64,000 nt of DNA from the IMG/VR virus record IMGVR_UViG_3300042558_004148, positions 1 through 64,000 of that record; one strand, given 5' to 3'. Below the pieces are notes generated by a model. It saw nothing but the letters and a program-made list of their open reading frames with translations. It made no database searches and had not been told where the DNA came from. Position 1 is the stretch's first letter, and each line of letters opens with the position of its first letter. This document shows, piece by piece, positions 5,635-39,098 of this stretch. A program made the translations under genes and the position numbers.

Positions 5635-6456
5635 TTGATGAAAAAAATAATATTCAACTCATCATTACCTAGATCTGGATCAACACTTTGGCAAAATATA
5701 ATTGCACAAAATCCTGATTTCTATTGCACTCCCACTTCGGGACTTGCTGACATGGTGCTTTCCTCCAAGAACGCTTATAATAATTCGCAAGCTGTTTTAG
5801 CTCAGGATCCGGAGGTCATGAAGAAAGCTTTCATAGGATATTGTATGGCAGGAATTCAGGGATATTTTAATGACATAACGGACAAACCATTTGTACTCGA
5901 AAAAAGTAGGGAATGGGGAGTAAATTACGGACTTCTTAATATGCTCCAGCACGAACCCAAGGTTGTCTGTATGGTTAGGGATCTTAGATCCGTATATTCA
6001 TCAATGGAGAAGAATTTTAGAAAAAACCCACATCGCGAGAATCATGTGCAGAATGTTCCGGAATTGGTCGGTACAACTCTCAGAAAAAGAATAGATATTT
6101 GGGCTGATGGTGTACCTGTTGGTGTTTCTGTTGATAGATTGAGAGATATAATAGATCAGGGAATAGATAAAAATATACTTTTTATTAGATACGAGGACCT
6201 TATGAGCGATCCAGAATCAGAGGTTAAAAGATTCTACGACTATATAGGGATTGACTATTATCCAGGACATAATTTTAAAACAATCGAGCAGGTAACACAT
6301 GAAAATGATTTAATTCATGGAATATACGGTGATCATAAATTAAGAACCGAATTTAAAAGACTACCTGATGATTATGAGGAGATATTAGGATTTGAGCTTT
6401 CTCAGGCAATCAAGAATACCTATGGATGGTTCTATGATTATTTTGAATATGTGTAA
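5635..6456 (+). CDS. PAPS-dependent sulfotransferase
   Basis: N-terminal 5'-PSB loop SSLPRSGSTL; 3'-PB-like MVRDLRSVYSS; IRYEDL motif. Confidence 0.85.
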   Translation: MMKKIIFNSSLPRSGSTLWQNIIAQNPDFYCTPTSGLADMVLSSKNAYNNSQAVLAQDPEVMKKAFIGYCMAGIQGYFNDITDKPFVLEKSREWGVNYGLLNMLQHEPKVVCMVRDLRSVYSSMEKNFRKNPHRENHVQNVPELVGTTLRKRIDIWADGVPVGVSVDRLRDIIDQGIDKNILFIRYEDLMSDPESEVKRFYDYIGIDYYPGHNFKTIEQVTHENDLIHGIYGDHKLRTEFKRLPDDYEEILGFELSQAIKNTYGWFYDYFEYV

Positions 6457-6485
6457 TAAATAATCGATAATTAATTTTTATAATA

Positions 6486-6935
6486 ATGGCAATTTATATA
6501 CTAACCGGTCAACCTCATTCAGGAAAAACAACCCTCGCTAATCATTTAAAAAATTCTTTGGATAAATCTTTCGTTATAGATGGTGACGATCTGAGGGAAA
6601 TACTGAATAATAAGGATTATTCTGAAGCGGGAAGAAGAAAGAACATAGAGACAGCTCATTCGATAGCTAAATACTTATCTAGGCAGGACGTTAATAACAA
6701 TATAATAATATCATTGGTTAGCCCGTATAAAGATCTTAGAGACAGTCTAAAATGCGAAAATGGAGCTGTCGAATTTTATATACATACTTCTGAAATAAGG
6801 GGAAGAGAATCTTTTCATGTAGCAGAATATCAAAAACCTACTGAAGATTTTACTGATATTGACACTACTGGAATATCAGAAACTGAATCACTAAAACAAA
6901 TATTATGGAAAATTGGTCAAAAAAAGTCCATGTAA
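6486..6935 (+). CDS. cysC: Adenylyl-sulfate (APS) kinase, compact form
   Basis: P-loop LTGQPHSGKTT; IDGDDLR; RRKNI; SLVSPY; YQKP. Confidence 0.85.
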   Translation: MAIYILTGQPHSGKTTLANHLKNSLDKSFVIDGDDLREILNNKDYSEAGRRKNIETAHSIAKYLSRQDVNNNIIISLVSPYKDLRDSLKCENGAVEFYIHTSEIRGRESFHVAEYQKPTEDFTDIDTTGISETESLKQILWKIGQKKSM

Positions 6936-19138: not shown

Positions 19139-22100
19139 ATGGCAAATAAGGTAAAAATAGACTATTCTCAATTCAGAGCATCTGGAGTCTACACACTTGA
19201 GTTTGACGCATCTCAGAATGTTATATTAACATCACAAACGATAAGACTGGTTGTTGGATTTTCTAACAAAGGTCCTTTTAATACTCCGGTTTATATACCG
19301 GATGTTACTACAATGATATCGATCTTTGGAGATGTTGATAGATCATTAGAAAACAAAGGATCTTTTTTCCAAAGATCCATACTAACATGTTTAAATACAG
19401 GTCCTGTTTTCGCGTTAAATCTTTTAAGATTAAATGATGATGAGGAGACTGCAAATCCTGATGAAGTTACGTATCAGTCATATTCACTTGATACCGAAGA
19501 ATATAACGGTGAAGTAACCAGTAGGTTATATTCATCATACTATAACAAGGAGAGATTTTGGTTCGCTGATCCAAATTATTTTCTTGCTACATTAAGTGTT
19601 GCTGATCAGGGTAAACTATTCAATCTAACAAATCTTGGTAAGTCACCTATGAGTATAATTACTAGAAAATCTACGGATTCGTCTAGACCACTTAGAGGAT
19701 ATGATATTTTTGCTATTGATTGGTATGGTGCAGATAACGTTCCTAGTTTTATGCATCCATATGACTATATGGCTGATTATTTCATAGACGTTATCGCAAT
19801 ATATGGTGATTGGACAAATTATCAAGCATTAGCTCTAGATCCTAAATGGAGCACGTACTTTACTGATAATGGATTTATAAAAAGTAGAATTGATAATTTC
19901 CTATCTGAACCTGATGTATCTATAGTTACTTCAGTTACTGGATGTATCATACCTGATTTCGTTGATCTTAATGGTGTTACTCAATACATTCAGGTATTAA
20001 TAAATAACAGTACTCCTTCAACAGGGTTATTTTGTGCAATAGATGAACAAGCTTTCGATGACATATGTGCTAATGGATCTAAAATAGATTTAGTAGGTAA
20101 TCACCTTATCGATGAATTAACCGGTGATAGTGATCTAGCTACTCCAAGAATAAATTTCTTAAGTTATGATCAGGTTCTTGTTTCTGACTACCTTTATACA
20201 CAGAACGTAATAGGAGTAACAGGAGCTACTGGATTTAATAGTGCTACTGGAGCAACTGTTTATACTACTGGATCTAAAGTGGGTACGCTATATACACTAA
20301 CCGGAAATTCTGGAGCAACAGCTGGTATCGTTCAGCAATCATTCTTACCTTATGATGCTAATGCATATGATGGTGGATTACACTATCTACAAACTAGTGG
20401 AACGTACGGAACAACAGCGGGATATTTACAGAATGCAGCTAATGTTAATTCACTTAAGACTTTCTTAACTGTAACATCGTCTAATGACGAGAAATTCATA
20501 TTGGGTGTTGTTTCTGGATATACTGGAGGTTTAACTGGCGCATTACTTAACCAATTTGCAGAGGCAGATTTAGTTAAACTTAAAGTTACTGGTACCAGAG
20601 ATATCTCGGGGGCACTTAGAATTTTCTGGACTCATCCATTAGATACATCATTCTATAGAGGACAGGGTATAACGGTTACACCTACTTTTAATTTAACGTC
20701 ATATAATACGGGAGCTTCTGGAAGTAATCCTTCATTCTATACTAATGCTTACCAATTTGGTAATTCCGATTATCTTGATATTATCAACGTAGCTACACCT
20801 AGTGGGGTTACAGGACCGGGAGCACCTACTGGAACATCAAATGTGCTTGTCGGATATAATGCTTCTGCTCTTTTCCAGGATAACAAATATGCTGAAATAA
20901 CTGATGGAGATATCGCTTGGACCAGCTCGGACGGAACTTCACTTAGATACTTAGGTTTTGAATCAACAGTTGATAAGGACCAGTTTAATATGGTTTATAC
21001 CAGAGCATTTAGTAATGTATCAAGAGCTAACGAAACAATTACAAACATACCGGCATTTGCTAGCACATATGCTTCAAATAATATAGGTCTTCCAGTAGGA
21101 ACACAAGATTTTGATATAATTTCTCAGGAAGGTTCAATTAACCAATTTGTAGATTGTACTAAAATAGACGTTACCACATTCTTGGTTACACTGGATAGTA
21201 ATAGTAACGTTCCATTCTCGGTAGGAGATTTGGTAGTTTCTACTGATCTTGATATATGTGAACCTGCTACGGGTAACAGACAAAGCAGATTAGCAAAGAT
21301 AACATCTGTTGCTATGACAACAACATTAGGAACTTATAGAGTTACCTCAGCTAGACCTGTACTTTATTATACATCAGGAACAGGAATTAGAGTTCAGAAA
21401 TTCAAATCAATTGCACAGTTTACAAGATCTTTTGATTTTAGTTATCTAAGCGGATTTACTATGAACGAATCTCATAGACCAAACGGAAGCGACGCTAGAA
21501 TTTCTGAAATATTGGATGTTATGTATGACACTAATATAGCTAAAACACTGGCTGCTAAGGACGTTATATCATTCAGATACATCGTGGATACTTTCTCTGG
21601 TCAAATATTACCTAACTCTAAATACCAATTAAGTAGATTGGCTAAGCTTAGACAACAGGCATTAGCATTAATAAACGCTCCTTCAATGGCTCAATTTAGA
21701 GCAAGTACGGATCCTAGATTTACTGATGCACCTACAGCGGCTAACCCATATCCAAGATTAAATACTGCTTATATTGTAGATGGTGGTAATTTATCTTTGA
21801 ATCCATCTTATACATTTAGTTTACCTAGTGAGGACGAAGGAGCTAAGTATGCTGCTTTCTATTCTCCTTATATCACAGTAAGAGAAAATAATAGAAACGT
21901 GGAGGTTCCACCTTCTGCTTACGTTTCTAATAACTTCCTAAGAAAATTTGCAAACGGTGAACCTTATGCAATTATAGCAGGACAGAAAAGAGGGGTTATC
22001 AGTGGAGGTAATATAGTTGGTGTTGAATATGATTTTACCGACGAGGATAGAGGAAATCTTGAACCATTCGGTATTAACCCAATTATAAAAAGAAGAGGTA

Positions 22101-22492
22101 TTGGAGTAGTTATTTTCGGTAACCAAACTGCATATCAGCAAGTTAATTCCGCATTTAACCTTGTTCACGTTAGAGATTTGCTAATCAGCGTAGAAAATGA
22201 CGTACAGGAAATATTAGCAAATTATCTATTTGACTTCAATGACGATTCTATCAGACTTGAAATAAAAACATTAGTGGATAACTACCTAGATGGAGTTAGA
22301 GCAGGTGGAGGTATTTATGCTTATCAGACTGTTATGGATGCTTCGAATAATACCCCTGCAATCATCGATATGAATATGGGAATAATCGACATCATAATCG
22401 AACCAGCTAGAGGTATACAGAAATTCATTAATAGAATCACTGTTACTAGAACTGGCGGAATCGCATCAGGAGGATTTATACAATTTGCATAA
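19139..22492 (+). CDS. gp18: Contractile tail sheath protein (gp18-like), enlarged to 1117 aa
   Basis: ASGVYTLEFD N-terminus; C-terminal VPPSAYVS, FGINPI...VIFGNQT, VHVRDLL sheath motifs. Confidence 0.92.
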   Translation: MANKVKIDYSQFRASGVYTLEFDASQNVILTSQTIRLVVGFSNKGPFNTPVYIPDVTTMISIFGDVDRSLENKGSFFQRSILTCLNTGPVFALNLLRLNDDEETANPDEVTYQSYSLDTEEYNGEVTSRLYSSYYNKERFWFADPNYFLATLSVADQGKLFNLTNLGKSPMSIITRKSTDSSRPLRGYDIFAIDWYGADNVPSFMHPYDYMADYFIDVIAIYGDWTNYQALALDPKWSTYFTDNGFIKSRIDNFLSEPDVSIVTSVTGCIIPDFVDLNGVTQYIQVLINNSTPSTGLFCAIDEQAFDDICANGSKIDLVGNHLIDELTGDSDLATPRINFLSYDQVLVSDYLYTQNVIGVTGATGFNSATGATVYTTGSKVGTLYTLTGNSGATAGIVQQSFLPYDANAYDGGLHYLQTSGTYGTTAGYLQNAANVNSLKTFLTVTSSNDEKFILGVVSGYTGGLTGALLNQFAEADLVKLKVTGTRDISGALRIFWTHPLDTSFYRGQGITVTPTFNLTSYNTGASGSNPSFYTNAYQFGNSDYLDIINVATPSGVTGPGAPTGTSNVLVGYNASALFQDNKYAEITDGDIAWTSSDGTSLRYLGFESTVDKDQFNMVYTRAFSNVSRANETITNIPAFASTYASNNIGLPVGTQDFDIISQEGSINQFVDCTKIDVTTFLVTLDSNSNVPFSVGDLVVSTDLDICEPATGNRQSRLAKITSVAMTTTLGTYRVTSARPVLYYTSGTGIRVQKFKSIAQFTRSFDFSYLSGFTMNESHRPNGSDARISEILDVMYDTNIAKTLAAKDVISFRYIVDTFSGQILPNSKYQLSRLAKLRQQALALINAPSMAQFRASTDPRFTDAPTAANPYPRLNTAYIVDGGNLSLNPSYTFSLPSEDEGAKYAAFYSPYITVRENNRNVEVPPSAYVSNNFLRKFANGEPYAIIAGQKRGVISGGNIVGVEYDFTDEDRGNLEPFGINPIIKRRGIGVVIFGNQTAYQQVNSAFNLVHVRDLLISVENDVQEILANYLFDFNDDSIRLEIKTLVDNYLDGVRAGGGIYAYQTVMDASNNTPAIIDMNMGIIDIIIEPARGIQKFINRITVTRTGGIASGGFIQFA

Positions 22493-25020: not shown

Positions 25021-26595
25021 ATGGCAGACCAGAAATTAATATCGAGCATATTTGATCTCACTAAAAATGTGGATAAACTTTCTGGCGACATTAAAAAGAA
25101 TGCTGCTAGTACTTCCGAATTGGTAGCAGCTCAAGAAAAAAGCGCAGAGAGCACCAAGGATCTTGGTAAAGTTGCAGAGAGCATAAAGGGATTGGATCTG
25201 AAGAGTCTGAAGGGTGAATTTTCAGAGCTTACTAAAAGCATCGGAGGACTTGATTTTAAGGGTCTTTCCGGTGATCTTAAAGCACTTGATTTTAAAGGAC
25301 TTACCAAGGATCTAAAATCATTGGACTTTAAAGGATTAACTCAGGGATTAAAAGGACTTGATTTAAAGGGAATTGTAGGTGGAGCTAAAGGATTAGATCT
25401 TAAGGGCATTTCCGGGTCATTAGGAGACATCGGATCTCTTAAGGATACAATATCAGGATCACTTGGTGGATTATTAAAAGGCGGAGGAAAGGGAATATTA
25501 GGTGCTTTTGCAGAGGGTGGTGATGTTAAAAAGACTGGTAATTATCTTGTTGGAGAAAAAGGACCCGAAGTAGTTAAAATAAAGGCTGGAGCTGCTGTTA
25601 TACCTAATAACATTTTAAAGGAAAGACAGGATATTTTAAAAAAACTAGGATCTGATGCTCCTAGCGAAAAAGAAATATCCAGAAAAAGAAATGAACTTAT
25701 TGCTGAGGATCCCTCATATTATGAGGATGAGCCAGGCTGGCTAGAGGAGGACCTTAATTCGTATCTAGCGGGACTTCAGGGAAAAGCAACATCTGAATTT
25801 ACGCAAGAGGATTTAAAGAAATTATCTAAGCCCGTAGATAATAAGGCTGAAGAATTGGTGAACCCTTCAGCAGCTCCAGTAAAAACCGACAAAAAGGGAA
25901 AAAGTGAGGAAGATAAAGCCAAACTGAAGGAAAAAAAGGATGGATTATTTTCTAAGATTTTTGGAAAGAAAGATAAGGATGAAGCTGAGAGTGGTGATAA
26001 GAAATCAAAGTTCTCCGATCTAATATCTAAGGGTGGTGATCTACTAAAGGAAAATAAGGATGCACTTAAAGGAAAGGCTTCTGAATTAGGATTAGGTGGA
26101 ATAACAGATATTTTTAAATCCAAAAAAGATGGCGGTGGTCCGGGTGGAATGTTAAATTCTCTTAAAGGTTTAAATAAAAAATCTGGTGAAGACGGAGCTG
26201 GTGGATTATTAAGTTCTATTAAGGGACTGGGTAAAAAATCTGGTGATGGCGAATCAGGTGGCATTAAGAGTGATATAGTGAAGCTATCAAAAAAAGAGAA
26301 TAAATCTGGAACACCTGGTGATTCTCCTTCCGCACCAACAAATCAAGCTACTGATAATAAAAAATCAACAACAGTTTCATCAGCCACTCCATCCACTGAA
26401 TCTTCTAGCCCAACTACAGGAAAAGAAAAATCAGATGCATCCGCTGCAGCATCTTCCATGGACGGAGGTCAATTAACAGCAGCAGACGGAGCTGAAATAA
26501 AGATACTTTTAGCAAGAATGGCATCTGCACTGGAAGGTACGTTAACCGTTTCCTCACTAGAATCACCATTTAGACCGGATTCTAGAAAATTCTAA
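25021..26595 (+). CDS. Tape-measure-like / baseplate hub protein
   Basis: AFAEGG-x-V...YLVGEKGPEVV motif common in tape-measure proteins; position after gp26/gp51; N-terminal 12-aa repeats. Confidence 0.55.
   Translation: MADQKLISSIFDLTKNVDKLSGDIKKNAASTSELVAAQEKSAESTKDLGKVAESIKGLDLKSLKGEFSELTKSIGGLDFKGLSGDLKALDFKGLTKDLKSLDFKGLTQGLKGLDLKGIVGGAKGLDLKGISGSLGDIGSLKDTISGSLGGLLKGGGKGILGAFAEGGDVKKTGNYLVGEKGPEVVKIKAGAAVIPNNILKERQDILKKLGSDAPSEKEISRKRNELIAEDPSYYEDEPGWLEEDLNSYLAGLQGKATSEFTQEDLKKLSKPVDNKAEELVNPSAAPVKTDKKGKSEEDKAKLKEKKDGLFSKIFGKKDKDEAESGDKKSKFSDLISKGGDLLKENKDALKGKASELGLGGITDIFKSKKDGGGPGGMLNSLKGLNKKSGEDGAGGLLSSIKGLGKKSGDGESGGIKSDIVKLSKKENKSGTPGDSPSAPTNQATDNKKSTTVSSATPSTESSSPTTGKEKSDASAAASSMDGGQLTAADGAEIKILLARMASALEGTLTVSSLESPFRPDSRKF
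25249..25428 (+). repeat. Five tandem 12-aa repeats LD[FL]KG[LI]xxx[LA]Kx
   Basis: LDFKGLSGDLKA / LDFKGLTKDLKS / LDFKGLTQGLKG / LDLKGIVGGAKG / LDLKGISGSLGD. Confidence 0.85.
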
Positions 26596-31947: not shown

Positions 31948-31969
31948 AACTGTAAAAAAAAATTTAACC

Positions 31970-34141
31970 ATGGACTTCATAAACCAAGTAAAAAAATTAA
32001 AAGAAGTAACTAAATCACCTGAGGTTAGAACTCTATGTGAAAGTTTTCTTAACGGGGGATCAGTTTCGGAGAGCGATCTAGTTAAATCTATTAATGAACA
32101 TAATATAACTCCAGACTTCGTATCAAATACGCAAAACCATTTAGATATGATAAGAAAAGAGGAAGCAGAACTTTCTAAAAAGAATGCTGCAGCTCTTATG
32201 GAATCTTGGGGAGGTTTGAAAAATGCATCTTTAAATAATGCAGGATCATACATCTCTAGGAAAGAAGAAAAAGAAGACGTATCACTTTTAGAGAGCTTAT
32301 CGCAATTAGAAGGAAGTGATTTGGATTCTACCGCTAAGTCATTTATTAAATCGCAAGAAGTAAATAATCTAGGAATAAGATTAGCATTAAATTCTATTAA
32401 GGAATCTTCAATTTATAGCTATCCGAAAGCTAAGATTATGGTTGAACAATACAGTAATCTTTTGGAAAATAAAGGAGTTCCTGAATTTTCATTAGTTCAT
32501 AATTTCCTAAATGATATTAAATCTTTATCATGGGATAAAGACGTAGCACAAGTTGCTGAATCTGTTAAGGAGAAATGTGAATCATTGAGCAGAGAAATAG
32601 AGGTAGCTAAAGTTTTGGAAGCTCTAAAGAATAGTGGTAACTCTTCATTCTATTCTGAATTGAACGAAACGTTGAATGCTTGGTTAGTATCGGAAAAAAA
32701 ATCTAATGGTCTACTTGTTAAGAATATTTCAAAATGGAATTTTAATCCAATGGTTAGAGGATTAATAAATTATCTTAATGTTAATGAAACTGAGGATAAA
32801 AGAAAACTTGAAATACCTGAAACTATACAGGGTGAATCTAGCGTATCAAGGGTATATTCTCCAGTTTTATTAGAAAATGGTAGATCACTATTTTACCTTG
32901 GTGGATTTATATTCGAGGCTAATGAGGAAGGTTTAAGAAAAATATCTGATAAAGAAATATCAGCATTGCCACAAGAATATCTTTCATTAGTTTATACATA
33001 CGGTAAAAAACATGTTAGAGTTAACGAAAACGGTATCTTTATTAAATTAGGAAAAAGCATAGTTAGATTGGTTGAAGAAAATGACGAGGTAACTGCTTAT
33101 ATGGGAAAAACTAGATTGAAATTTAGTGATCCTAGTGGTCTTGCTAAGATTGTTGGATTGGAATCCGGATCTTATTTCGGAGTTAATGAATCCGATGTGG
33201 TTAATGACATAATGAATCTTTATACTAATTATAGTAACATCGTAGAATTAGACTTTGCTAAAAGTTTAACTTCAAATGTATATGAAGGTGTTGGTGTTAA
33301 TTTATTCAAATGGATGGATCAAATTTATCTTCAGAAGATAAATGATTCAATGAATGAGAATTCAATACACAAAGTAACTGGAACACAAGCAGTTTCGGTT
33401 GTTAAAAATTATCTTAGATACGATATCTCAGAAGGTTTAACAGAATTCTTGGAAGGTGAGAGCAAGGTTAAATCCGTTATGATTAACGATAGAGAGAAAG
33501 TCATTTCAAACATATCTAAAGTTGATGAGGAATTAAATAAAATAAATACCCTAATAGGATCAAGTCCATTGTACGGAGAATCAGATCAGATCAAAACAGC
33601 TAAAAGAATGCTTGAGTCTGAACTTGTTATGCTAAGAGAAAAATGGAACCAAATAAATCTTGAAATTGAAAAAATAGAGCTTGATATTAATATGAGCGGA
33701 AGCTTAGATCTATTCGAGGATGAAAAATTCAATATCGGTTCTTATATAAAAGTTAAAGAGTCTGGTGAGACTGGAAAAATTATATCTATGGATGGTACAT
33801 CAGGAAGATATACAGTATTATTAGACAATGGCAAAACCTCAGACTTCCTAATAAATGAAATTAGTGACCTTGAGGAAGCATTATCTCAGGCAGCTGAAAA
33901 GAATGCTGAATCATCTGATGAGGACGGTGAGGAAGAAGTTAAAGAATCTAACAATCTTAATAAATCTGACCTTTCAATAGAGGAGCAAAAAAATATACTA
34001 AAGAATTTTGCTGATATGCACGGATTTACTAAAGCTCCTAAAGGTGAAACAGAAGAAAAAATAGAATTAGGTCTAGATAGCTTACATGGTTACAATATAT
34101 CAATGAACGAAGAATCTAGTGAAGATTTAAAAAAAAAGTAA
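31970..34141 (+). CDS. Large late head-associated protein with C-terminal SH3/KOW-like domain; probably extended by -1 frameshift to 34296
   Basis: IGSYIKVKESGETGKIISMD...RYTVLLDNG SH3-like motif; several [LI]-x-E protease-type sites; ends in TTA AAA AAA AAG TAA. Confidence 0.7.
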   Translation: MDFINQVKKLKEVTKSPEVRTLCESFLNGGSVSESDLVKSINEHNITPDFVSNTQNHLDMIRKEEAELSKKNAAALMESWGGLKNASLNNAGSYISRKEEKEDVSLLESLSQLEGSDLDSTAKSFIKSQEVNNLGIRLALNSIKESSIYSYPKAKIMVEQYSNLLENKGVPEFSLVHNFLNDIKSLSWDKDVAQVAESVKEKCESLSREIEVAKVLEALKNSGNSSFYSELNETLNAWLVSEKKSNGLLVKNISKWNFNPMVRGLINYLNVNETEDKRKLEIPETIQGESSVSRVYSPVLLENGRSLFYLGGFIFEANEEGLRKISDKEISALPQEYLSLVYTYGKKHVRVNENGIFIKLGKSIVRLVEENDEVTAYMGKTRLKFSDPSGLAKIVGLESGSYFGVNESDVVNDIMNLYTNYSNIVELDFAKSLTSNVYEGVGVNLFKWMDQIYLQKINDSMNENSIHKVTGTQAVSVVKNYLRYDISEGLTEFLEGESKVKSVMINDREKVISNISKVDEELNKINTLIGSSPLYGESDQIKTAKRMLESELVMLREKWNQINLEIEKIELDINMSGSLDLFEDEKFNIGSYIKVKESGETGKIISMDGTSGRYTVLLDNGKTSDFLINEISDLEEALSQAAEKNAESSDEDGEEEVKESNNLNKSDLSIEEQKNILKNFADMHGFTKAPKGETEEKIELGLDSLHGYNISMNEESSEDLKKK

Positions 34142-34296
34142 GTCGTAACTTTTATTTTGCTCCTAAAGGGGAAAATCAAAATAAACCAGGCGAGACTTTC
34201 GTTCAATCTTCGGATGGTAAATTAAGTAAAGCTCCTGACGGTAAAGAAATTGAATCCTCTGATGAAAACGAGGAGGATGAAGAAGATAAAGAATAA
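34138..34296 (+). other. -1-frame coding extension (52 codons) after the A_AAA_AAG slippery site
   Basis: VSRNFYFAPKGENQNKPGETFVQSSDGKLSKAPDGKEIESSDENEEDEEDKE*; no own start codon; ends just before a terminator. Confidence 0.65.
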
Positions 34297-34298
34297 TT

Positions 34299-34332
34299 AA
34301 AGAATGTAGCTCATAAGCTACATTCTTTTTTT
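34299..34332 (+). terminator. Rho-independent terminator
   Basis: 13-bp perfect stem AAAGAATGTAGCT-cata-AGCTACATTCTTT plus T tract. Confidence 0.85.
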
Positions 34333-34387: not shown

Positions 34388-34747
34388 ATGGCTAAAGAAT
34401 ATGTTAAAAACAGCGAGCTTTTAGCAGCTGTAATAGAATCTAAAAGTAAGGGTCAACTTACACCCGATACAATAGATATGTTTATGTTAATGATAAACGG
34501 AATATCTAAAAAAATGTCATATAAGGATCCGGAAGATAAGGAGGATTGTATGGCATTTGCAATGGAGGATCTTTGTAAATATTGGAATAGATTTAACCCA
34601 GAGAAATCAAATAATCCATTTGCTTATTATACACAGATAGCTAAAAATGGATTTGCTAAGGGATGGAAAAAAATACATCCGCCAAAAAATCCTAAAACAA
34701 TACCTTTCAGCTATATAACTGGTGAGGATAATTCGTATAACGTTTAA
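34388..34747 (+). CDS. gp55: Late-transcription sigma factor (T4 gp55-like), very short (119 aa)
   Basis: EYVKNSELL and RFNPEKSNNPFAYYTQIAKN signature motifs. Confidence 0.8.
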   Translation: MAKEYVKNSELLAAVIESKSKGQLTPDTIDMFMLMINGISKKMSYKDPEDKEDCMAFAMEDLCKYWNRFNPEKSNNPFAYYTQIAKNGFAKGWKKIHPPKNPKTIPFSYITGEDNSYNV

Positions 34748-35878: not shown

Positions 35879-37477
35879 ATGGCAGGTTTTGTAGATAATA
35901 ATGATCCTTCTCAAACTCCGGTAATACAGAGAATTAGAGATTCTGTAAGAAAAATTAGTTCATTTGGTATGAAATACGATGACATGGTCATCCGTAATTC
36001 ACAGGCTGTCGGTGTTACTGAGGCTGCTTTTCTTAATAAGAATAAGTCCAACGTTGAGGATGAAAGCATGCTATGGACTTTAGCGAAGCAGGATATATCA
36101 TCCAGACAATTCATAGGATATTTTGACAAGGATTATAAAGGAAAAAGAGACTATCTTAGAAAATTCTCATTAAACCCTGAAGTTGAATGGGTTCTTGATA
36201 CCATATGTGACGAAGCAATATCTTACGATCCATCAAATTTCTTTGCATATCCTGATTTCATAGATCTTAGCGACGTTAATGAAAAAATCAAGGATGATTT
36301 ATATGACTCGTATAAAAAACTTTACGATGTTTGGGGATTTTCTGATGACATAACAGCTTGGCAATATTTTAGACAATTTATAGTAGATGGATTTCTCTCA
36401 TTTGAAATAATATATGATAATAAAGGTGAAAATATAATCGGATTTAAGGAACTAGATCCAATTACACTTATACCTAGTGTTGAGAAACAAATAGACGGTA
36501 GCTATCTTAGTACATGGACGCAATATCCTCAGGATCCCAAAAGAAAAAGAGTATTATATGATCCGCAGATTATATACATTTCATATGCAAAGGGAAATAG
36601 CATATCAAGAGTTAGCTACATAGAGAGATTAATAAGACCTTATAATATTCTAAGAATTATAGAATATACTAGGGTTATATGGTCAGTCATGAATGCATCG
36701 TTTAAACTTAAGATGACCATTCCAATAGGAAGCAAATCTCAGCAGAAGGGTATGCAAACTCTGGGTGAACTGATGAGCATCTATAAGGAGGATATCCAAT
36801 TGAATGATGATAGTGGCGAGCTTACAGTCGACGGTAGACCTAAAATACAGTTTTATAAAAACTATTTGATGCCTTCCGGTGTTAACGGAACTCCAACCAT
36901 AGAGCCTATAAACACTGAGGGACCAAATCTTAATGATCCACAACCTTTATCATATTTCTTTGACAAATATATTTTAGAATCTAAAGTTCCTCCCTCCAGA
37001 TTTCATAATCCAGACGGCGGAACAACTTCACCATATTCGAATGGTGCGGAAGGGCTTGATAAGGAAGAAATTAGATTTGCCAAATTTATAGATAGACTTA
37101 GATCAGTATTCCAGGAGATATTATTAAAACCTTTATGGATACAAATGGTTAAAAAGCATAAATCACTTGACGATGATTTTATGTTTAAGAGTCAGCTTGG
37201 ATTGGATTATGTTTCCGATAACCCATTCAAGTTAAATCAGGAGATGGATTTAATAAATAAAAGGAAGGAAGCAGTTGTCGCAATGACTGGATTAATGGGT
37301 GATGAGGAAAAACCATATTTTTCTAGTGCATTTCTTATAGAGACTTTTCTTGGAATATCCAAACAGGATATTGATGCAAATAAAGAAGCATTGGAAAGAA
37401 AAGAAAAAGAGAAGAAAAAAGAGGAAGGTAAAAAAGAAGAGGGCGGAGAAGAGGAAGCTCCGGAAGTAACACTATAA
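35879..37477 (+). CDS. gp20: Portal protein, copy 1 (T4 gp20-like)
   Basis: PEVEWVLDTICDEAI, FRQFIVDG, YIERLIRPYNILRIIE, SKVPPSR, EEIRFAKFIDRLR. Confidence 0.9.
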   Translation: MAGFVDNNDPSQTPVIQRIRDSVRKISSFGMKYDDMVIRNSQAVGVTEAAFLNKNKSNVEDESMLWTLAKQDISSRQFIGYFDKDYKGKRDYLRKFSLNPEVEWVLDTICDEAISYDPSNFFAYPDFIDLSDVNEKIKDDLYDSYKKLYDVWGFSDDITAWQYFRQFIVDGFLSFEIIYDNKGENIIGFKELDPITLIPSVEKQIDGSYLSTWTQYPQDPKRKRVLYDPQIIYISYAKGNSISRVSYIERLIRPYNILRIIEYTRVIWSVMNASFKLKMTIPIGSKSQQKGMQTLGELMSIYKEDIQLNDDSGELTVDGRPKIQFYKNYLMPSGVNGTPTIEPINTEGPNLNDPQPLSYFFDKYILESKVPPSRFHNPDGGTTSPYSNGAEGLDKEEIRFAKFIDRLRSVFQEILLKPLWIQMVKKHKSLDDDFMFKSQLGLDYVSDNPFKLNQEMDLINKRKEAVVAMTGLMGDEEKPYFSSAFLIETFLGISKQDIDANKEALERKEKEKKKEEGKKEEGGEEEAPEVTL

Positions 37478-37481
37478 TAAG

Positions 37482-39098
37482 ATGGCAGGATTTTTAGACT
37501 TTTTAAAACCGAATCAATCAGCTTTAGGTAATATACTAAAGAATCTTGGAAACATATCAAAATTTGGTATGGAGTACGATGATATGGTTGTAAAAAATTC
37601 TCAGGCTATTGGTAAGACTGAGGGATTTTTCTATAATCAGGATGGTAATGGATTTACAGAAAATGATGCTTTCTATTGGACATCATCTTATCAGGACACT
37701 AAGGTAAGAAAATATATTGCATATTTTGACCGTGATTATATTGAGAAAAGAAATTATCTTAGAAAATTTTCACTTAATGGCGAAATAGAGTTCATATTAG
37801 ATACAATAACTGATGAAGCCATAGTATATGATGATAGAAATTATTTTGCTCAGCCTTCGTTCGTAAATCTGGATCTTAAGGATAAAGTAAAGGATAAGAT
37901 ATCAGAACATTATAATAAGATTTATAATGTATTTGGGTTTCAGAACACAATACTAGGATGGCAATATTTTAAGCAGTTTTTAATTGATGGATTTCTTGCA
38001 TTTGAAATAATATATGACAGTAAGGGAAAAAATGTGATAGGATTTAAAGAATTGGATCCAACTTCACTTCAGCCCATAGTCGAAAAGGTAGGGGAAGAGG
38101 AACATAAACAATTTTGGATACAATATCCAAAGAATCCTCAGATGACCAGGAAGTTGACCAACGAGCAGGTAATTTATATTTCTTATGCTAAAGGAAATAT
38201 GATAACTAGAGTTAGCTATGTTGAGAGATTAGTTAGATCATATAATATTCTTAGAATAATGGAAAATTCCAGAATTATATGGAACGTAATGAACTCGTCA
38301 TATAGATTAAAATTCATTATACCTATAGGTACCCAATCACAGCAAAAAGCAATGCAGAATCTTGGTCAATTAATGTCAAACTACAAGGAGGACATTAATA
38401 TCAATGATTCATCTGGTGAATTAACAATAAACGGTAAACCTAAAATTCAATTCTACAAGAATTATTTATTTCCCGAAAAGGATGGACAAAGTCCACAAAT
38501 AGAATCCCTTAATCCTAGTGGTCCTGATTTCAACGTAATGGAAAATGTGGTTTATTTTTTCAATAAGCTTAAAATGGATTCTAAGATACCCTACGCTAGA
38601 TTTGCGTCTAGAAACAGCACTCCTGGGAATTATCAGACAAGCATAGATCAATTGGAGAGAGATGAAATTAGATTCGAGAAGTTTCTGAGAAGACTTAGAT
38701 CAATTTTTCAGGAAATATTAACGAAGCCACTCTATATCCAGATGTGTCTGGATAATCCTGAATTGTCCAGAGATAAGAACTTTAAAGCAAATATAGGACT
38801 TAATTATAATAGGGATAGCGAATTTGAGGAAATGGTCGAGATGACCAATTACACAAAAAGAACCGAATTTATAAATGGTCTTGGCGAGCTCAAAGTTAAG
38901 ATAGGCGAGGAGGAGAAAGGATATTTTGATAAGAACTTTTTAATACAAAGATTCCTTGGTATGAATCCGGATCAAATAAGAATGAACGAGAAGTATAAGG
39001 AAGCTGAAGAAAAATTAGCTGAAAAAGCGGGAGGTGAAAAACCTGCTGAGGGTGAAGCCCCTGCTGAGGGAGAAGAAGCACCGGAAGTAACACTATAA
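37482..39098 (+). CDS. gp20: Portal protein, copy 2 (T4 gp20-like paralog)
   Basis: Same motif set as copy 1 (EIEFILDTITDEAI, YVERLVRSYNILRIME, DEIRFEKFLRRLR); both end EEAPEVTL. Confidence 0.9.
   Translation: MAGFLDFLKPNQSALGNILKNLGNISKFGMEYDDMVVKNSQAIGKTEGFFYNQDGNGFTENDAFYWTSSYQDTKVRKYIAYFDRDYIEKRNYLRKFSLNGEIEFILDTITDEAIVYDDRNYFAQPSFVNLDLKDKVKDKISEHYNKIYNVFGFQNTILGWQYFKQFLIDGFLAFEIIYDSKGKNVIGFKELDPTSLQPIVEKVGEEEHKQFWIQYPKNPQMTRKLTNEQVIYISYAKGNMITRVSYVERLVRSYNILRIMENSRIIWNVMNSSYRLKFIIPIGTQSQQKAMQNLGQLMSNYKEDININDSSGELTINGKPKIQFYKNYLFPEKDGQSPQIESLNPSGPDFNVMENVVYFFNKLKMDSKIPYARFASRNSTPGNYQTSIDQLERDEIRFEKFLRRLRSIFQEILTKPLYIQMCLDNPELSRDKNFKANIGLNYNRDSEFEEMVEMTNYTKRTEFINGLGELKVKIGEEEKGYFDKNFLIQRFLGMNPDQIRMNEKYKEAEEKLAEKAGGEKPAEGEAPAEGEEAPEVTL

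What the first reader, a model, noticed from the sequence alone, without database searches (positions are those of the whole stretch)
34121..34332. Probable programmed -1 frameshift (or A9 slippage) adding a 52-aa acidic tail to a late head protein
Seen: the 723-aa ORF ends TTA AAA AAA AAG TAA (A9 run; in-phase A_AAA_AAG at 34132-34138 directly followed by the stop). The -1 frame stays open for 52 protein-like codons (...FAPKGE...KAPDGK...EEDEEDKE*), echoing KAPKGE in the 0 frame. It has no start codon of its own and ends 2 nt before a perfect terminator. Established: frameshifted long and short forms of capsid and tail proteins occur in several phages. A homopolymer sequencing error (true A10) is the alternative.
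Basis: partly seen in the sequence, partly recalled or inferred. Interest (0 to 1): 0.68.

Follow-up and report, generated by a model that had tools for sequence, protein, structure and literature searches.

The report
Conserved A9 recoding site, jumbo phage
A gene of unknown function in a 373-kb phage ends in a run of nine A's that every sampled relative keeps, and slipping back one base there adds a conserved 52-residue acidic tail, so this is very probably a programmed way of making a short and a long form of one protein and not a sequencing error.

Summary
ORF 31970-34141 (723 aa) ends TTA AAA AAA AAG TAA. The -1 frame then runs 52 codons (34138-34293), has no start codon, and stops 2 nt before a 13-bp terminator.

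Comparison settles the interpretation. All 76 related viral contigs that reach the gene's 3' end (49 distinct sequences, down to 43% protein identity) keep a run of at least nine A's and encode the same tail. In 44 of the 49 distinct sequences the tail lies in the -1 frame directly after the stop. The tail is under purifying selection (median dN/dS 0.31).

One subclade carries the tail fused in frame. Another has it as a separate small ORF. Within one common sequence context, 33 contigs have A9 and none has A8 or A10, which rules out a homopolymer error.

Long A runs are otherwise strongly avoided in this genome's coding sequence (4 observed against 27 expected). No conserved RNA structure or Shine-Dalgarno-like element flanks the site.

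I favour RNA polymerase slippage at the A9 run (0.55) over ribosomal -1 frameshifting at A_AAA_AAG/C plus the stop (0.33). No RNA or read data could be obtained. The "head protein" label is unsupported; the protein's function is unknown.

The parts
31970..34141 (+). 0-frame ORF of 723 aa (P0001), the short isoform. The model shows a helical N-domain, a beta domain of three similar strand-helix units, a coiled-coil hairpin, an SH3/KOW-like barrel and a disordered acidic C-terminus with one hydrophobic-x-x-A-P motif (FTKAP).
34129..34137 (+). A9 homopolymer, the proposed slippage site. A run of at least nine A's is present in all 76 related loci that reach the gene end.
34132..34138 (+). In-phase X_XXY_YYZ heptamer A_AAA_AAG. 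Most relatives have A_AAA_AAC.
34139..34141 (+). 0-frame TAA stop directly 3' of the heptamer. A stop directly follows the run codons in 44 of the 49 distinct related sequences.
34117..34122 (+). TAG TGA in the -1 frame. They close that frame upstream and confine a productive shift to 34123-34138.
34138..34296 (+). -1 frame extension of 52 codons plus a TAA stop. It holds two more hydrophobic-x-x-A-P motifs (FYFAP, LSKAP) and an acidic end, has no start codon, and is conserved under purifying selection.
34299..34332 (+). Intrinsic terminator: 13-bp stem, 4-nt loop and a T run. It lies after the tail, not after the 0-frame stop. An equivalent hairpin plus T run follows the tail stop in 34 of 49 relatives, with different stem sequences in different clades.

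Best explanation
The gene makes two isoforms from one promoter. Standard decoding gives the 723-aa short form, which ends in the family's conserved ...DLKKK or ...KKN C-terminus.

In a fraction of transcripts the RNA polymerase slips on the A9 run (34129-34137) and adds one extra A. The polymerase is probably the host enzyme, since the phage has a T4 gp55-type late sigma factor. Ordinary translation of that mRNA passes the TAA in the genomic -1 frame and adds 52 residues: two more hydrophobic-x-x-A-P motifs and an acidic end. The result is a long form of about 775 aa, and transcription ends at the terminator just after the tail. Other slippage products (+2, -1) stop within about 3 codons and count as short form.

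What is shown: the anatomy, its deep conservation, coding-type evolution of the tail, the natural fused and split variants, and avoidance of long A runs elsewhere in the genome.

What is inferred: that the long form is made at all (about 0.9), and that polymerase slippage rather than ribosomal slippage is the main route (0.55). The role of the tail is unknown. My guess is that it adds docking motifs of the kind already repeated in the 0-frame C-terminus, so that the slippage rate sets the ratio of the two forms.
For: 1. Run length. All 76 loci that reach the 3' end have a run of nine or ten A's and the tail-coding sequence. The 49 distinct sequences split as A9+C 35, A9+G 7, A10+G 5, A10+T 1 and A9+T 1.
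2. Selection on the run itself. The codon before the Lys codons varies in meaning (Leu, Val, Ser, Gln, Glu) but always ends in A. Yet GTA is only 30% of Val codons, TCA 24% of Ser and TTA 40% of Leu in these genes, and both Lys codons are always AAA although AAG makes up 25% of Lys codons.
3. Tail frame. Median pairwise dN/dS is 0.31 and third-position entropy is about twice that of positions 1 and 2. There is no start codon in 47 of 49 sequences.
4. Natural variants. In-frame fusions occur in L039/L040/L046 and in protein clusters P0038/P0040/P0050. These are the only fused forms among 5.8 billion protein clusters. A stand-alone ORF with its own ATG occurs in L036/L037/L044. All sit in one derived clade, sister to the window's clade.
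5. L018/L052 have no adjacent stop and only an A_AAA_AAA heptamer, yet still have A9 and a -1 tail.
6. No conserved RNA structure was found from -40 to +110 (0 pairs). No conserved Shine-Dalgarno-like element lies upstream, and Shine-Dalgarno motifs are depleted genome-wide.
7. Most sites are A_AAA_AAC, which in E. coli is much less shift-prone than A_AAA_AAG (PMC5009743).
8. Bacterial RNA polymerase slips efficiently at runs of 9 A or T (PMC5009743). The site meets the comparative criteria of PMC1088944 for functional slippage.
9. Synonymous-codon shuffles of 396 ORFs of this genome give, for sense-strand A runs in coding sequence: at least 9, 4 observed against 26.7 +/- 4.1; at least 10, 0 against 10.3; at least 8, 28 against 73.8. 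Long runs are selected against here, yet this one is kept.
10. The terminator follows the tail, not the 0-frame stop.
Against:
- The site also has every sequence feature of a bacterial -1 frameshift site: an in-phase heptamer and a 0-frame stop directly 3', kept in 44 of 49 sequences.
- In this phase, nine A's are exactly what two tandem in-phase heptamers need. The invariant run length therefore does not by itself separate the two mechanisms.
- The base after the run is C or G in 47 of 49 sequences, against codon preference in both frames (AAC is 34% of Asn codons, CTA 14% of Leu). Simple slippage does not explain this.
- Three other A9 runs lie inside ORFs of this genome with no alternative-frame extension. 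So either slippage is modest or truncated products are tolerated.
- The host and its polymerase are unknown.
Confidence: 0.55

Rival explanations
1. Programmed ribosomal -1 frameshifting. tRNAs on AAA-AAG (AAA-AAC in most relatives) slip back one base on A_AAA_AAG/C, helped by slow termination at the adjacent TAA, and translation continues into the tail. It may act alone or together with polymerase slippage.
For: The in-phase X_XXY_YYZ heptamer and a 0-frame stop directly 3' are kept in 44 of 49 distinct sequences. Nine A's in this phase give two tandem heptamers. C or G is conserved after the run. Late-gene -1 shifts that add a C-terminal extension are established in phages: T7 gene 10 (PMC5009743) and phage A2 head protein (cited in PMC10885494). 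The phage encodes its own tRNA-Lys(UUU) and two tRNA-Asn(GUU).
Against: There is no conserved downstream hairpin or pseudoknot and no upstream Shine-Dalgarno-like stimulator. Most sites use AAC, a weak A-site codon for -1 shifting in E. coli. L018/L052 lack the adjacent stop and have only A_AAA_AAA, yet keep the -1 tail. A run of 9 A's should make a typical bacterial RNA polymerase slip anyway.
Confidence: 0.33
2. Sequencing or assembly error: the true run is A10 and the gene is a single ORF of about 775 aa.
For: Homopolymers are error-prone on some platforms, and a single window cannot exclude this.
Against: In the context A-run + CTAAGYCGYAAYTT, 33 IMG/VR contigs from many samples have A9, none A8 and none A10. 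The window clade has A9 in 6 records and none with A10 in the metagenome collection. Clades down to 43% identity share the same stop and frame. The only fused forms arise from a different change (CCC to CCCC after the run) in one subclade.
Confidence: 0.01
3. Evolutionary relic: an ancestral in-frame C-terminal extension was cut off by a frameshift mutation, and the -1 ORF is decaying non-coding sequence.
For: Fused relatives exist.
Against: The fused state is derived and confined to one clade, whereas the shifted state occupies all deep branches. The tail stays open for 49-60 codons in 48 of 49 distinct sequences (77 in L017). It shows dN/dS of 0.31 and keeps its motifs across branches longer than 1 substitution per site.
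Confidence: 0.03
4. DNA-level phase variation: replication slippage switches the run between A9 and A10 in the phage population and turns the tail on or off heritably.
For: Homopolymer tracts are classic contingency loci, and long A runs are depleted genome-wide, which also fits avoidance of replication slippage.
Against: No A8 or A10 consensus was found in 33 + 6 contigs. No fused proteins exist outside one subclade among 5.8 billion clusters. Minority variants within samples could not be checked because no reads were available.
Confidence: 0.03
5. The tail is translated on its own, by internal initiation or by termination-reinitiation after the TAA.
For: In L036/L037/L044 the tail does stand as a separate ORF with its own ATG.
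Against: 47 of 49 distinct sequences have no ATG, GTG or TTG in the tail frame between the upstream stop and the conserved motif. The open part of that frame begins only 5 codons before the tail.
Confidence: 0.02

Closest known systems
Programmed transcriptional slippage at A9/T9 runs in bacteria: Thermus thermophilus dnaX, IS elements, Shigella type III secretion genes, Citrobacter rodentium tssM (PMC5009743, PMC1088944, PMC4256274)
   Same: A run of 9 identical A/T bases in the coding sense strand. Overlapping ORFs whose arrangement and run are both conserved among non-identical homologues. Homologues with a single fused ORF exist. No RNA structure is needed. Two length variants come from one gene.
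   Different: This case is in a dsDNA jumbo phage gene of unknown function, not a cellular or IS gene. In the papers searched I found no described programmed case in a tailed phage. Slippage itself is not demonstrated here.
T7/T3 gene 10A/10B and Lactobacillus phage A2 major head protein: -1 ribosomal frameshift near the 3' end of a late gene (PMC5009743; cited in PMC10885494)
   Same: A -1 shift within the last codons of a phage gene adds a C-terminal extension of some tens of residues to a fraction of the molecules, and a transcription terminator lies after the extension.
   Different: Those genes encode the major capsid protein, while P0001 matches no capsid family or fold. T7 uses G_GUU_UUC with a distant 3' element. 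This site is an A9 homopolymer with no conserved structure.
E. coli dnaX A_AAA_AAG -1 frameshift (PMC5009743)
   Same: The same heptamer as in the window, and a stop close to the shift site defines one of two isoforms made in a set ratio.
   Different: dnaX needs an upstream Shine-Dalgarno-like element and a downstream hairpin, and neither is conserved here. In dnaX the shift gives the shorter product, here the longer one. Most relatives here have AAC, not AAG.
Phage tail assembly chaperone G/GT frameshift (lambda and many others; PMC5009743, PMC10885494)
   Same: A deeply conserved -1 recoding in a tailed-phage gene gives short and long forms in a fixed ratio, and some lineages replace it by other arrangements.
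   Different: The gene is not between the tail tube and tape-measure genes, is 723 aa rather than about 100-150 aa, and its extension is a short disordered acidic tail rather than a folded T domain.

Membership tests
Functional transcriptional-slippage sites (comparative criteria of Baranov et al. 2005, PMC1088944) | Run of 9 or more A or T in the sense strand inside a protein-coding gene | tested here: met
   A9 at 34129-34137. A9 or A10 in 76 of 76 related loci.
Functional transcriptional-slippage sites (comparative criteria of Baranov et al. 2005, PMC1088944) | [quoted passage not shown] | tested here: met
   49 distinct sequences down to 43% identity. 44 have the run plus an adjacent stop and a -1 tail.
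Functional transcriptional-slippage sites (comparative criteria of Baranov et al. 2005, PMC1088944) | Homologues in which the transframe product is encoded by a single ORF | tested here: met
   L039/L040/L046 and P0038/P0040/P0050.
Functional transcriptional-slippage sites (comparative criteria of Baranov et al. 2005, PMC1088944) | The genome shows selection against such runs in coding sequence, meaning its polymerase is expected to slip | tested here: met
   Coding sense A runs of at least 9: 4 observed against 26.7 +/- 4.1. At least 10: 0 against 10.3, in 200 synonymous shuffles.
Functional transcriptional-slippage sites (comparative criteria of Baranov et al. 2005, PMC1088944) | A mixed mRNA population with extra A's while the DNA is uniform | not testable with these tools
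Bacterial -1 programmed ribosomal frameshift cassettes | In-phase X_XXY_YYZ slippery heptamer | tested here: met
   A_AAA_AAG at 34132-34138. A_AAA_AAC, AAG or AAA in relatives.
Bacterial -1 programmed ribosomal frameshift cassettes | Conserved 3' stimulatory hairpin or pseudoknot 5-9 nt downstream | tested here: not met
   RNAalifold on 28 diverse sequences from -40 to +110 gave 0 pairs.
Bacterial -1 programmed ribosomal frameshift cassettes | Upstream Shine-Dalgarno-like stimulator | tested here: not met
   No conserved GGAGG-like element in the alignment. Shine-Dalgarno motifs are depleted genome-wide: 19 of 330 gene starts against a 14.6% background.
Bacterial -1 programmed ribosomal frameshift cassettes | A 0-frame stop adjacent to the shift site, as an alternative stimulator | tested here: met
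   TAA at 34139-34141. An adjacent stop is kept in 44 of 49 distinct sequences.
Bacterial -1 programmed ribosomal frameshift cassettes | Transframe protein detected | not testable with these tools
   No proteomic data. No cultured relative carries the tail.
Frameshifted major capsid proteins (T7 10A/10B, phage A2 gp5A/5B) | The gene encodes the major capsid (HK97-fold) protein | tested here: not met
   No Pfam or PHROG family. No PDB sequence or fold match for the whole model or the beta domain. The model shows helical, beta-repeat, coiled-coil and SH3-like domains.
Frameshifted major capsid proteins (T7 10A/10B, phage A2 gp5A/5B) | A -1 shift in the last codons adds a C-terminal extension of tens of residues | tested here: met
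   52 codons at 34138-34293. Expression is inferred.
Tail assembly chaperone G/GT | A small gene between the tail tube and tape-measure genes, with the shift near its 3' end | tested here: not met
   The gene is 723 aa and lies about 5 kb downstream of the ORF with weak tape-measure similarity (25021-26595) and directly upstream of the gp55-like sigma gene.

The most novel reading that the evidence does not exclude
A widespread family of uncultivated jumbo phages with T4-type late genes has kept an exact A9 tract fixed over deep evolutionary time. The tract makes the host RNA polymerase stutter, so a set fraction of the mRNA encodes a tail-bearing isoform. This would be the first deeply conserved programmed transcriptional slippage in a tailed dsDNA phage. 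Its natural fused and split lineages act as built-in controls, and the isoform ratio might follow nucleotide pools or transcription speed during infection.
Probability: 0.5. Interest if true: 0.72.

Novelty: new member of a known kind. Interest (0 to 1): 0.6.

Why it matters
Gene callers truncate this protein in every genome of the family, and the tail-coding 156 nt are left as apparent 3' untranslated sequence. Recognising the site corrects the annotation of hundreds of metagenomic jumbo-phage contigs.

It also gives recoding research a clean natural test set. The same module occurs as a -1 overlap, as an in-frame fusion and as a separate ORF. That makes it possible to ask whether polymerase or ribosome slippage is used, and why a fixed ratio of isoforms is needed.

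It further shows that long A runs are counter-selected in this phage's genes, so a retained run is itself a signal worth scanning for.

Tried and rejected
- Megablast of the locus against GenBank phages found no match. tblastn of P0001 gave only weak hits, to a 462-kb uncultured phage and to Lak phages, whose genes lack the run and the tail. tblastn of the tail peptide found nothing.
- Pfam and PHROGs found nothing for P0001. A profile search against PDB sequences found nothing significant.
- Fold searches with the full model returned only generic coiled-coil hairpins and an SH3/KOW-like barrel. The ESM Atlas gave TM-scores below 0.3. The well-modelled beta domain (pLDDT 89) reached a best Z of only 5.8, which is within noise. 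So no function could be assigned.
- BFVD links the fold only to uncharacterised proteins of myoviruses and Tenacibaculum phages.
- An empirical null for "-1 frame open past the stop" across all genes of the genome was useless, because that frame often runs into the next gene.
- The two metagenome-contig scans had too few records to be informative: A10 gave 0 and A9 gave 1.
- The careful tree search did not finish, so the quick IQ-TREE tree was used.
- The large representative-protein search and complex prediction were not used, because no claim here rests on them.
- No alternative genetic code was invoked.
Full report
**1. What is in the window**

The window is the first 64 kb of a 373,485-bp viral record with direct terminal repeats. 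The record is 65% A+T and most of its genes lie on the + strand.

ORF 31970-34141 encodes 723 aa and ends GAT TTA AAA AAA AAG TAA. The run of nine A's is 34129-34137, the in-phase heptamer A_AAA_AAG is 34132-34138, and the stop is 34139-34141.

The -1 frame is closed by TAG TGA at 34117-34122. It is then open from 34123 and codes 52 residues beyond the run (34138-34293, stop 34294-34296). The +1 frame stops after 2 codons.

A 13-bp hairpin with a T run at 34299-34332 is the only terminator-like site on the + strand between 31700 and 34500. It lies 2 nt after the tail stop, about 155 nt after the 0-frame stop.

**2. Conservation**

A word-based protein search found 270 relatives. Close ones (88-96% identity) are also 723 aa. 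Nearly all family members end ...E-S-(D/E)-(D/E)-(L/V)-K-K-(N/K) whatever their length.

A scan of IMG/VR returned 80 loci at 43-100% identity. All 76 that reach the 3' end have a run of nine or ten A's and a conserved tail-coding sequence. They collapse to 49 distinct sequences:

| Run and next base | Distinct sequences |
|---|---|
| A9 + C | 35 |
| A9 + G | 7 |
| A10 + G | 5 |
| A10 + T | 1 |
| A9 + T | 1 |

In 44 of the 49 a stop follows the run directly and the tail is in the -1 frame. In two more (L018/L052 and L022/L023) the tail is also in the -1 frame, but the stop is not immediately adjacent.

The tail is 49-60 codons long, except 77 in L017. It reads (L/V)SRNFYFAPK ... QN.PG ... F(V/I)(Q/D) ... 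GK(L/F/M)(S/A)KAP(D/T)GK, followed by an acidic end.

**3. The tail evolves as coding sequence and the run itself is selected**

- Median pairwise dN/dS of the tail is 0.31 over 514 pairs. Summed column entropy by codon position is 46, 39 and 77.
- In 47 of 49 distinct sequences the tail frame has no ATG, GTG or TTG between its upstream stop and the conserved motif. The two exceptions are the fused and the split variants.
- The codon holding the first A of the run changes in meaning but always supplies an A: TTA 16, GTA 15, TCA 10, CTA 1, CAA 4, GAA 1. In these genes GTA is only 30% of Val codons, TCA 24% of Ser and TTA 40% of Leu.
- Both Lys codons are always AAA, although AAG makes up 25% of Lys codons in these genes.
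- The last codon is AAC in all 35 A9+C sequences, although AAC is only 34% of Asn codons.

**4. Three architectures**

- Most lineages have the -1 overlap.
- L039/L040/L046 and protein clusters P0038/P0040/P0050 carry the tail in frame. The junction reads ...TCA AAA AAA AAC CCC AGT CGT..., and A9 is retained.
- A search with the fused tail across 5.8 billion protein clusters found only those three clusters.
- L036/L037/L044 end the main gene earlier. They carry the last residues of the usual C-terminus plus the tail as a separate small ORF with its own ATG, again with A9.
- L018/L052 lack the adjacent stop (GAA AAA AAA ACC CAA...). Their 0 frame runs 14 codons out of register through the tail DNA, and the tail is still in the -1 frame.
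- In a quick maximum-likelihood tree these variants form one clade (support 100) that is sister to the window's clade. The canonical arrangement occupies all the deep branches, some longer than 1 substitution per site. So it is ancestral, and the fused and split forms are derived.

**5. Not a sequencing error and not consensus-level phase variation**

With the context A-run + CTAAGYCGYAAYTT, IMG/VR holds 33 contigs with A9, none with A8 and none with A10. The window's own clade has A9 in six records. No A10 version was found in the JGI metagenome collection, although only one A9 record was found there.

**6. Which mechanism**

RNAalifold on 28 diverse sequences from -40 to +110 around the run predicts no conserved pair. 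The alignment shows no conserved Shine-Dalgarno-like element upstream. Shine-Dalgarno motifs are in any case depleted before this genome's genes: 19 of 330 starts against a 14.6% background.

Most sites are A_AAA_AAC. In E. coli this is far less shift-prone than A_AAA_AAG (PMC5009743).

Bacterial RNA polymerase slips efficiently on runs of 9 A or T, and such runs are used productively in T. thermophilus dnaX, in IS elements and in Shigella secretion genes (PMC5009743; PMC1088944). This site meets the comparative criteria of PMC1088944: a conserved ORF arrangement plus a conserved 9-A run, with single-ORF homologues.

The phage has a T4 gp55-type late sigma factor directly downstream (34388-34747). 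So host core polymerase probably transcribes the gene.

Synonymous-codon shuffling of 396 ORFs shows steep avoidance of long sense-strand A runs:

| Run length | Observed | Expected from shuffles |
|---|---|---|
| at least 7 | 172 | 208 |
| at least 8 | 28 | 73.8 |
| at least 9 | 4 | 26.7 |
| at least 10 | 0 | 10.3 |

This is the signature that PMC1088944 links to slippage-prone polymerases. The other three coding A9 runs have no alternative-frame extension.

Against a clean verdict:
- The in-phase heptamer and the adjacent 0-frame stop are exactly what a stop-stimulated ribosomal -1 shift would need.
- Nine A's in this phase equal two tandem heptamers.
- The conserved C or G after the run is unexplained by simple slippage.

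I therefore put programmed recoding as such at about 0.9. Within that, polymerase slippage is 0.55 and ribosomal frameshifting 0.33. The two are not exclusive.

**7. What the protein is**

P0001 has no Pfam or PHROG family and no significant PDB sequence match.

The AlphaFold model (pLDDT 69) shows these parts:
- a helical N-terminal region
- a beta-rich domain at 283-486
- a coiled-coil hairpin at about 490-570
- a small SH3/KOW-like barrel at about 590-633
- a disordered C-terminus

The barrel gives weak PF20297 hits in homologues, and one subclade carries a peptidoglycan-binding-domain insert. Modelled alone, the beta domain reaches pLDDT 89 and consists of three similar strand-helix units. 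Its best structural match is only Z 5.8.

Whole-model searches return only generic helical hairpins and SH3-like hits. Among viral models, they return uncharacterised proteins of myoviruses and Tenacibaculum phages.

The disordered C-terminal region of the family carries repeated hydrophobic-x-x-A-P motifs, typically 4 per protein but only 1 in the window's clade. The tail carries 2 in 48 of 49 sequences and ends acidic, with a median net charge of -6 over the last 18 residues.

The tail thus looks like extra copies of a short linear motif already used in the 0 frame. What the motif binds is unknown. The label "late head protein" has no support beyond the neighbouring gp55-like, gp4-like and gp20-like genes.

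**8. Comparison and novelty**

- In mechanism the closest known systems are the A9/T9 transcriptional-slippage genes of bacteria.
- In outcome the closest are the C-terminally extended capsid isoforms of T7/T3 (10A/10B) and phage A2. The E. coli dnaX heptamer is also close.
- The site is not a member of the capsid or tail-chaperone frameshift families, because those defining features were tested and not met.
- I found no description of this family or of a programmed slippage site in a jumbo phage in the papers searched.
- No cultured phage in the GenBank set carries the tail.

I rate it a new member of a known kind. It is well supported by comparative evidence, and direct RNA or protein proof is outstanding.

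Noticed in passing
window 35879-37477 and 37482-39098: Two tandem T4 gp20-type portal genes (PF07230, E 6e-57 and 6e-69), 51% identical to each other over 523 residues. Both appear to end in a similar acidic ...APEVTL C-terminus. Two portal paralogues in one phage are unusual.
   Followed up: partly
whole record G000:C1 (the window is 1-64000): Sense-strand A and T runs are strongly depleted in coding sequence relative to synonymous shuffles (A runs of at least 9: 4 against 26.7; T runs of at least 8: 1 against 11.4). No run of 10 or more exists anywhere in 373 kb.
   Followed up: yes
G000:C1 174665-174673, 348722-348730, 353239-353247: These are the only other A9 runs inside long sense ORFs. 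None has an open alternative frame, so slippage there would truncate the product. The first two lie near the 5' ends, so the true starts may be downstream.
   Followed up: partly
window 31954-31962: A second A9 run lies 8 nt upstream of the ATG of the same gene, in its leader and just after a GATATATAAAC element. Similar ATATATA-type elements precede several neighbouring genes and may be late promoters.
   Followed up: no
G000:C1 303477-334905: A cluster of 33 tRNA genes includes Lys(UUU), two Asn(GUU) and two Leu(UAG). Leu(UAG) reads CUA, the rare first codon of the tail in most relatives.
   Followed up: no
whole record G000:C1: Shine-Dalgarno-like tetramers are rarer upstream of gene starts (5.8%) than at random positions (14.6%). 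This suggests a host with Shine-Dalgarno-independent initiation, such as Bacteroidota. Distant structural relatives are in Tenacibaculum phages and weak sequence relatives in Prevotella Lak phages.
   Followed up: partly
L036/L037/L044 (about 6807-7030 of L036) and P0038/P0049: One subclade has a peptidoglycan-binding domain (PF01471) inserted at about residue 120-172 of the protein. In this same subclade the tail is fused in frame or split off as a small ORF of about 70 codons with its own ATG.
   Followed up: partly
L017 about 6370-6600: In this relative the tail has lost its usual stop and runs on for 77 codons, and no terminator hairpin follows it.
   Followed up: no
window 32816-33427 (P0001 residues 283-486): A confidently modelled domain (pLDDT 89) is built of three similar units, each a four-stranded sheet plus a helix. 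It has no convincing PDB match (best Z 5.8) and may be an undescribed fold.
   Followed up: partly
window 19139-22492: A very large tail sheath homologue of 1117 aa. The sheath-family match covers only the last 340 residues or so.
   Followed up: no
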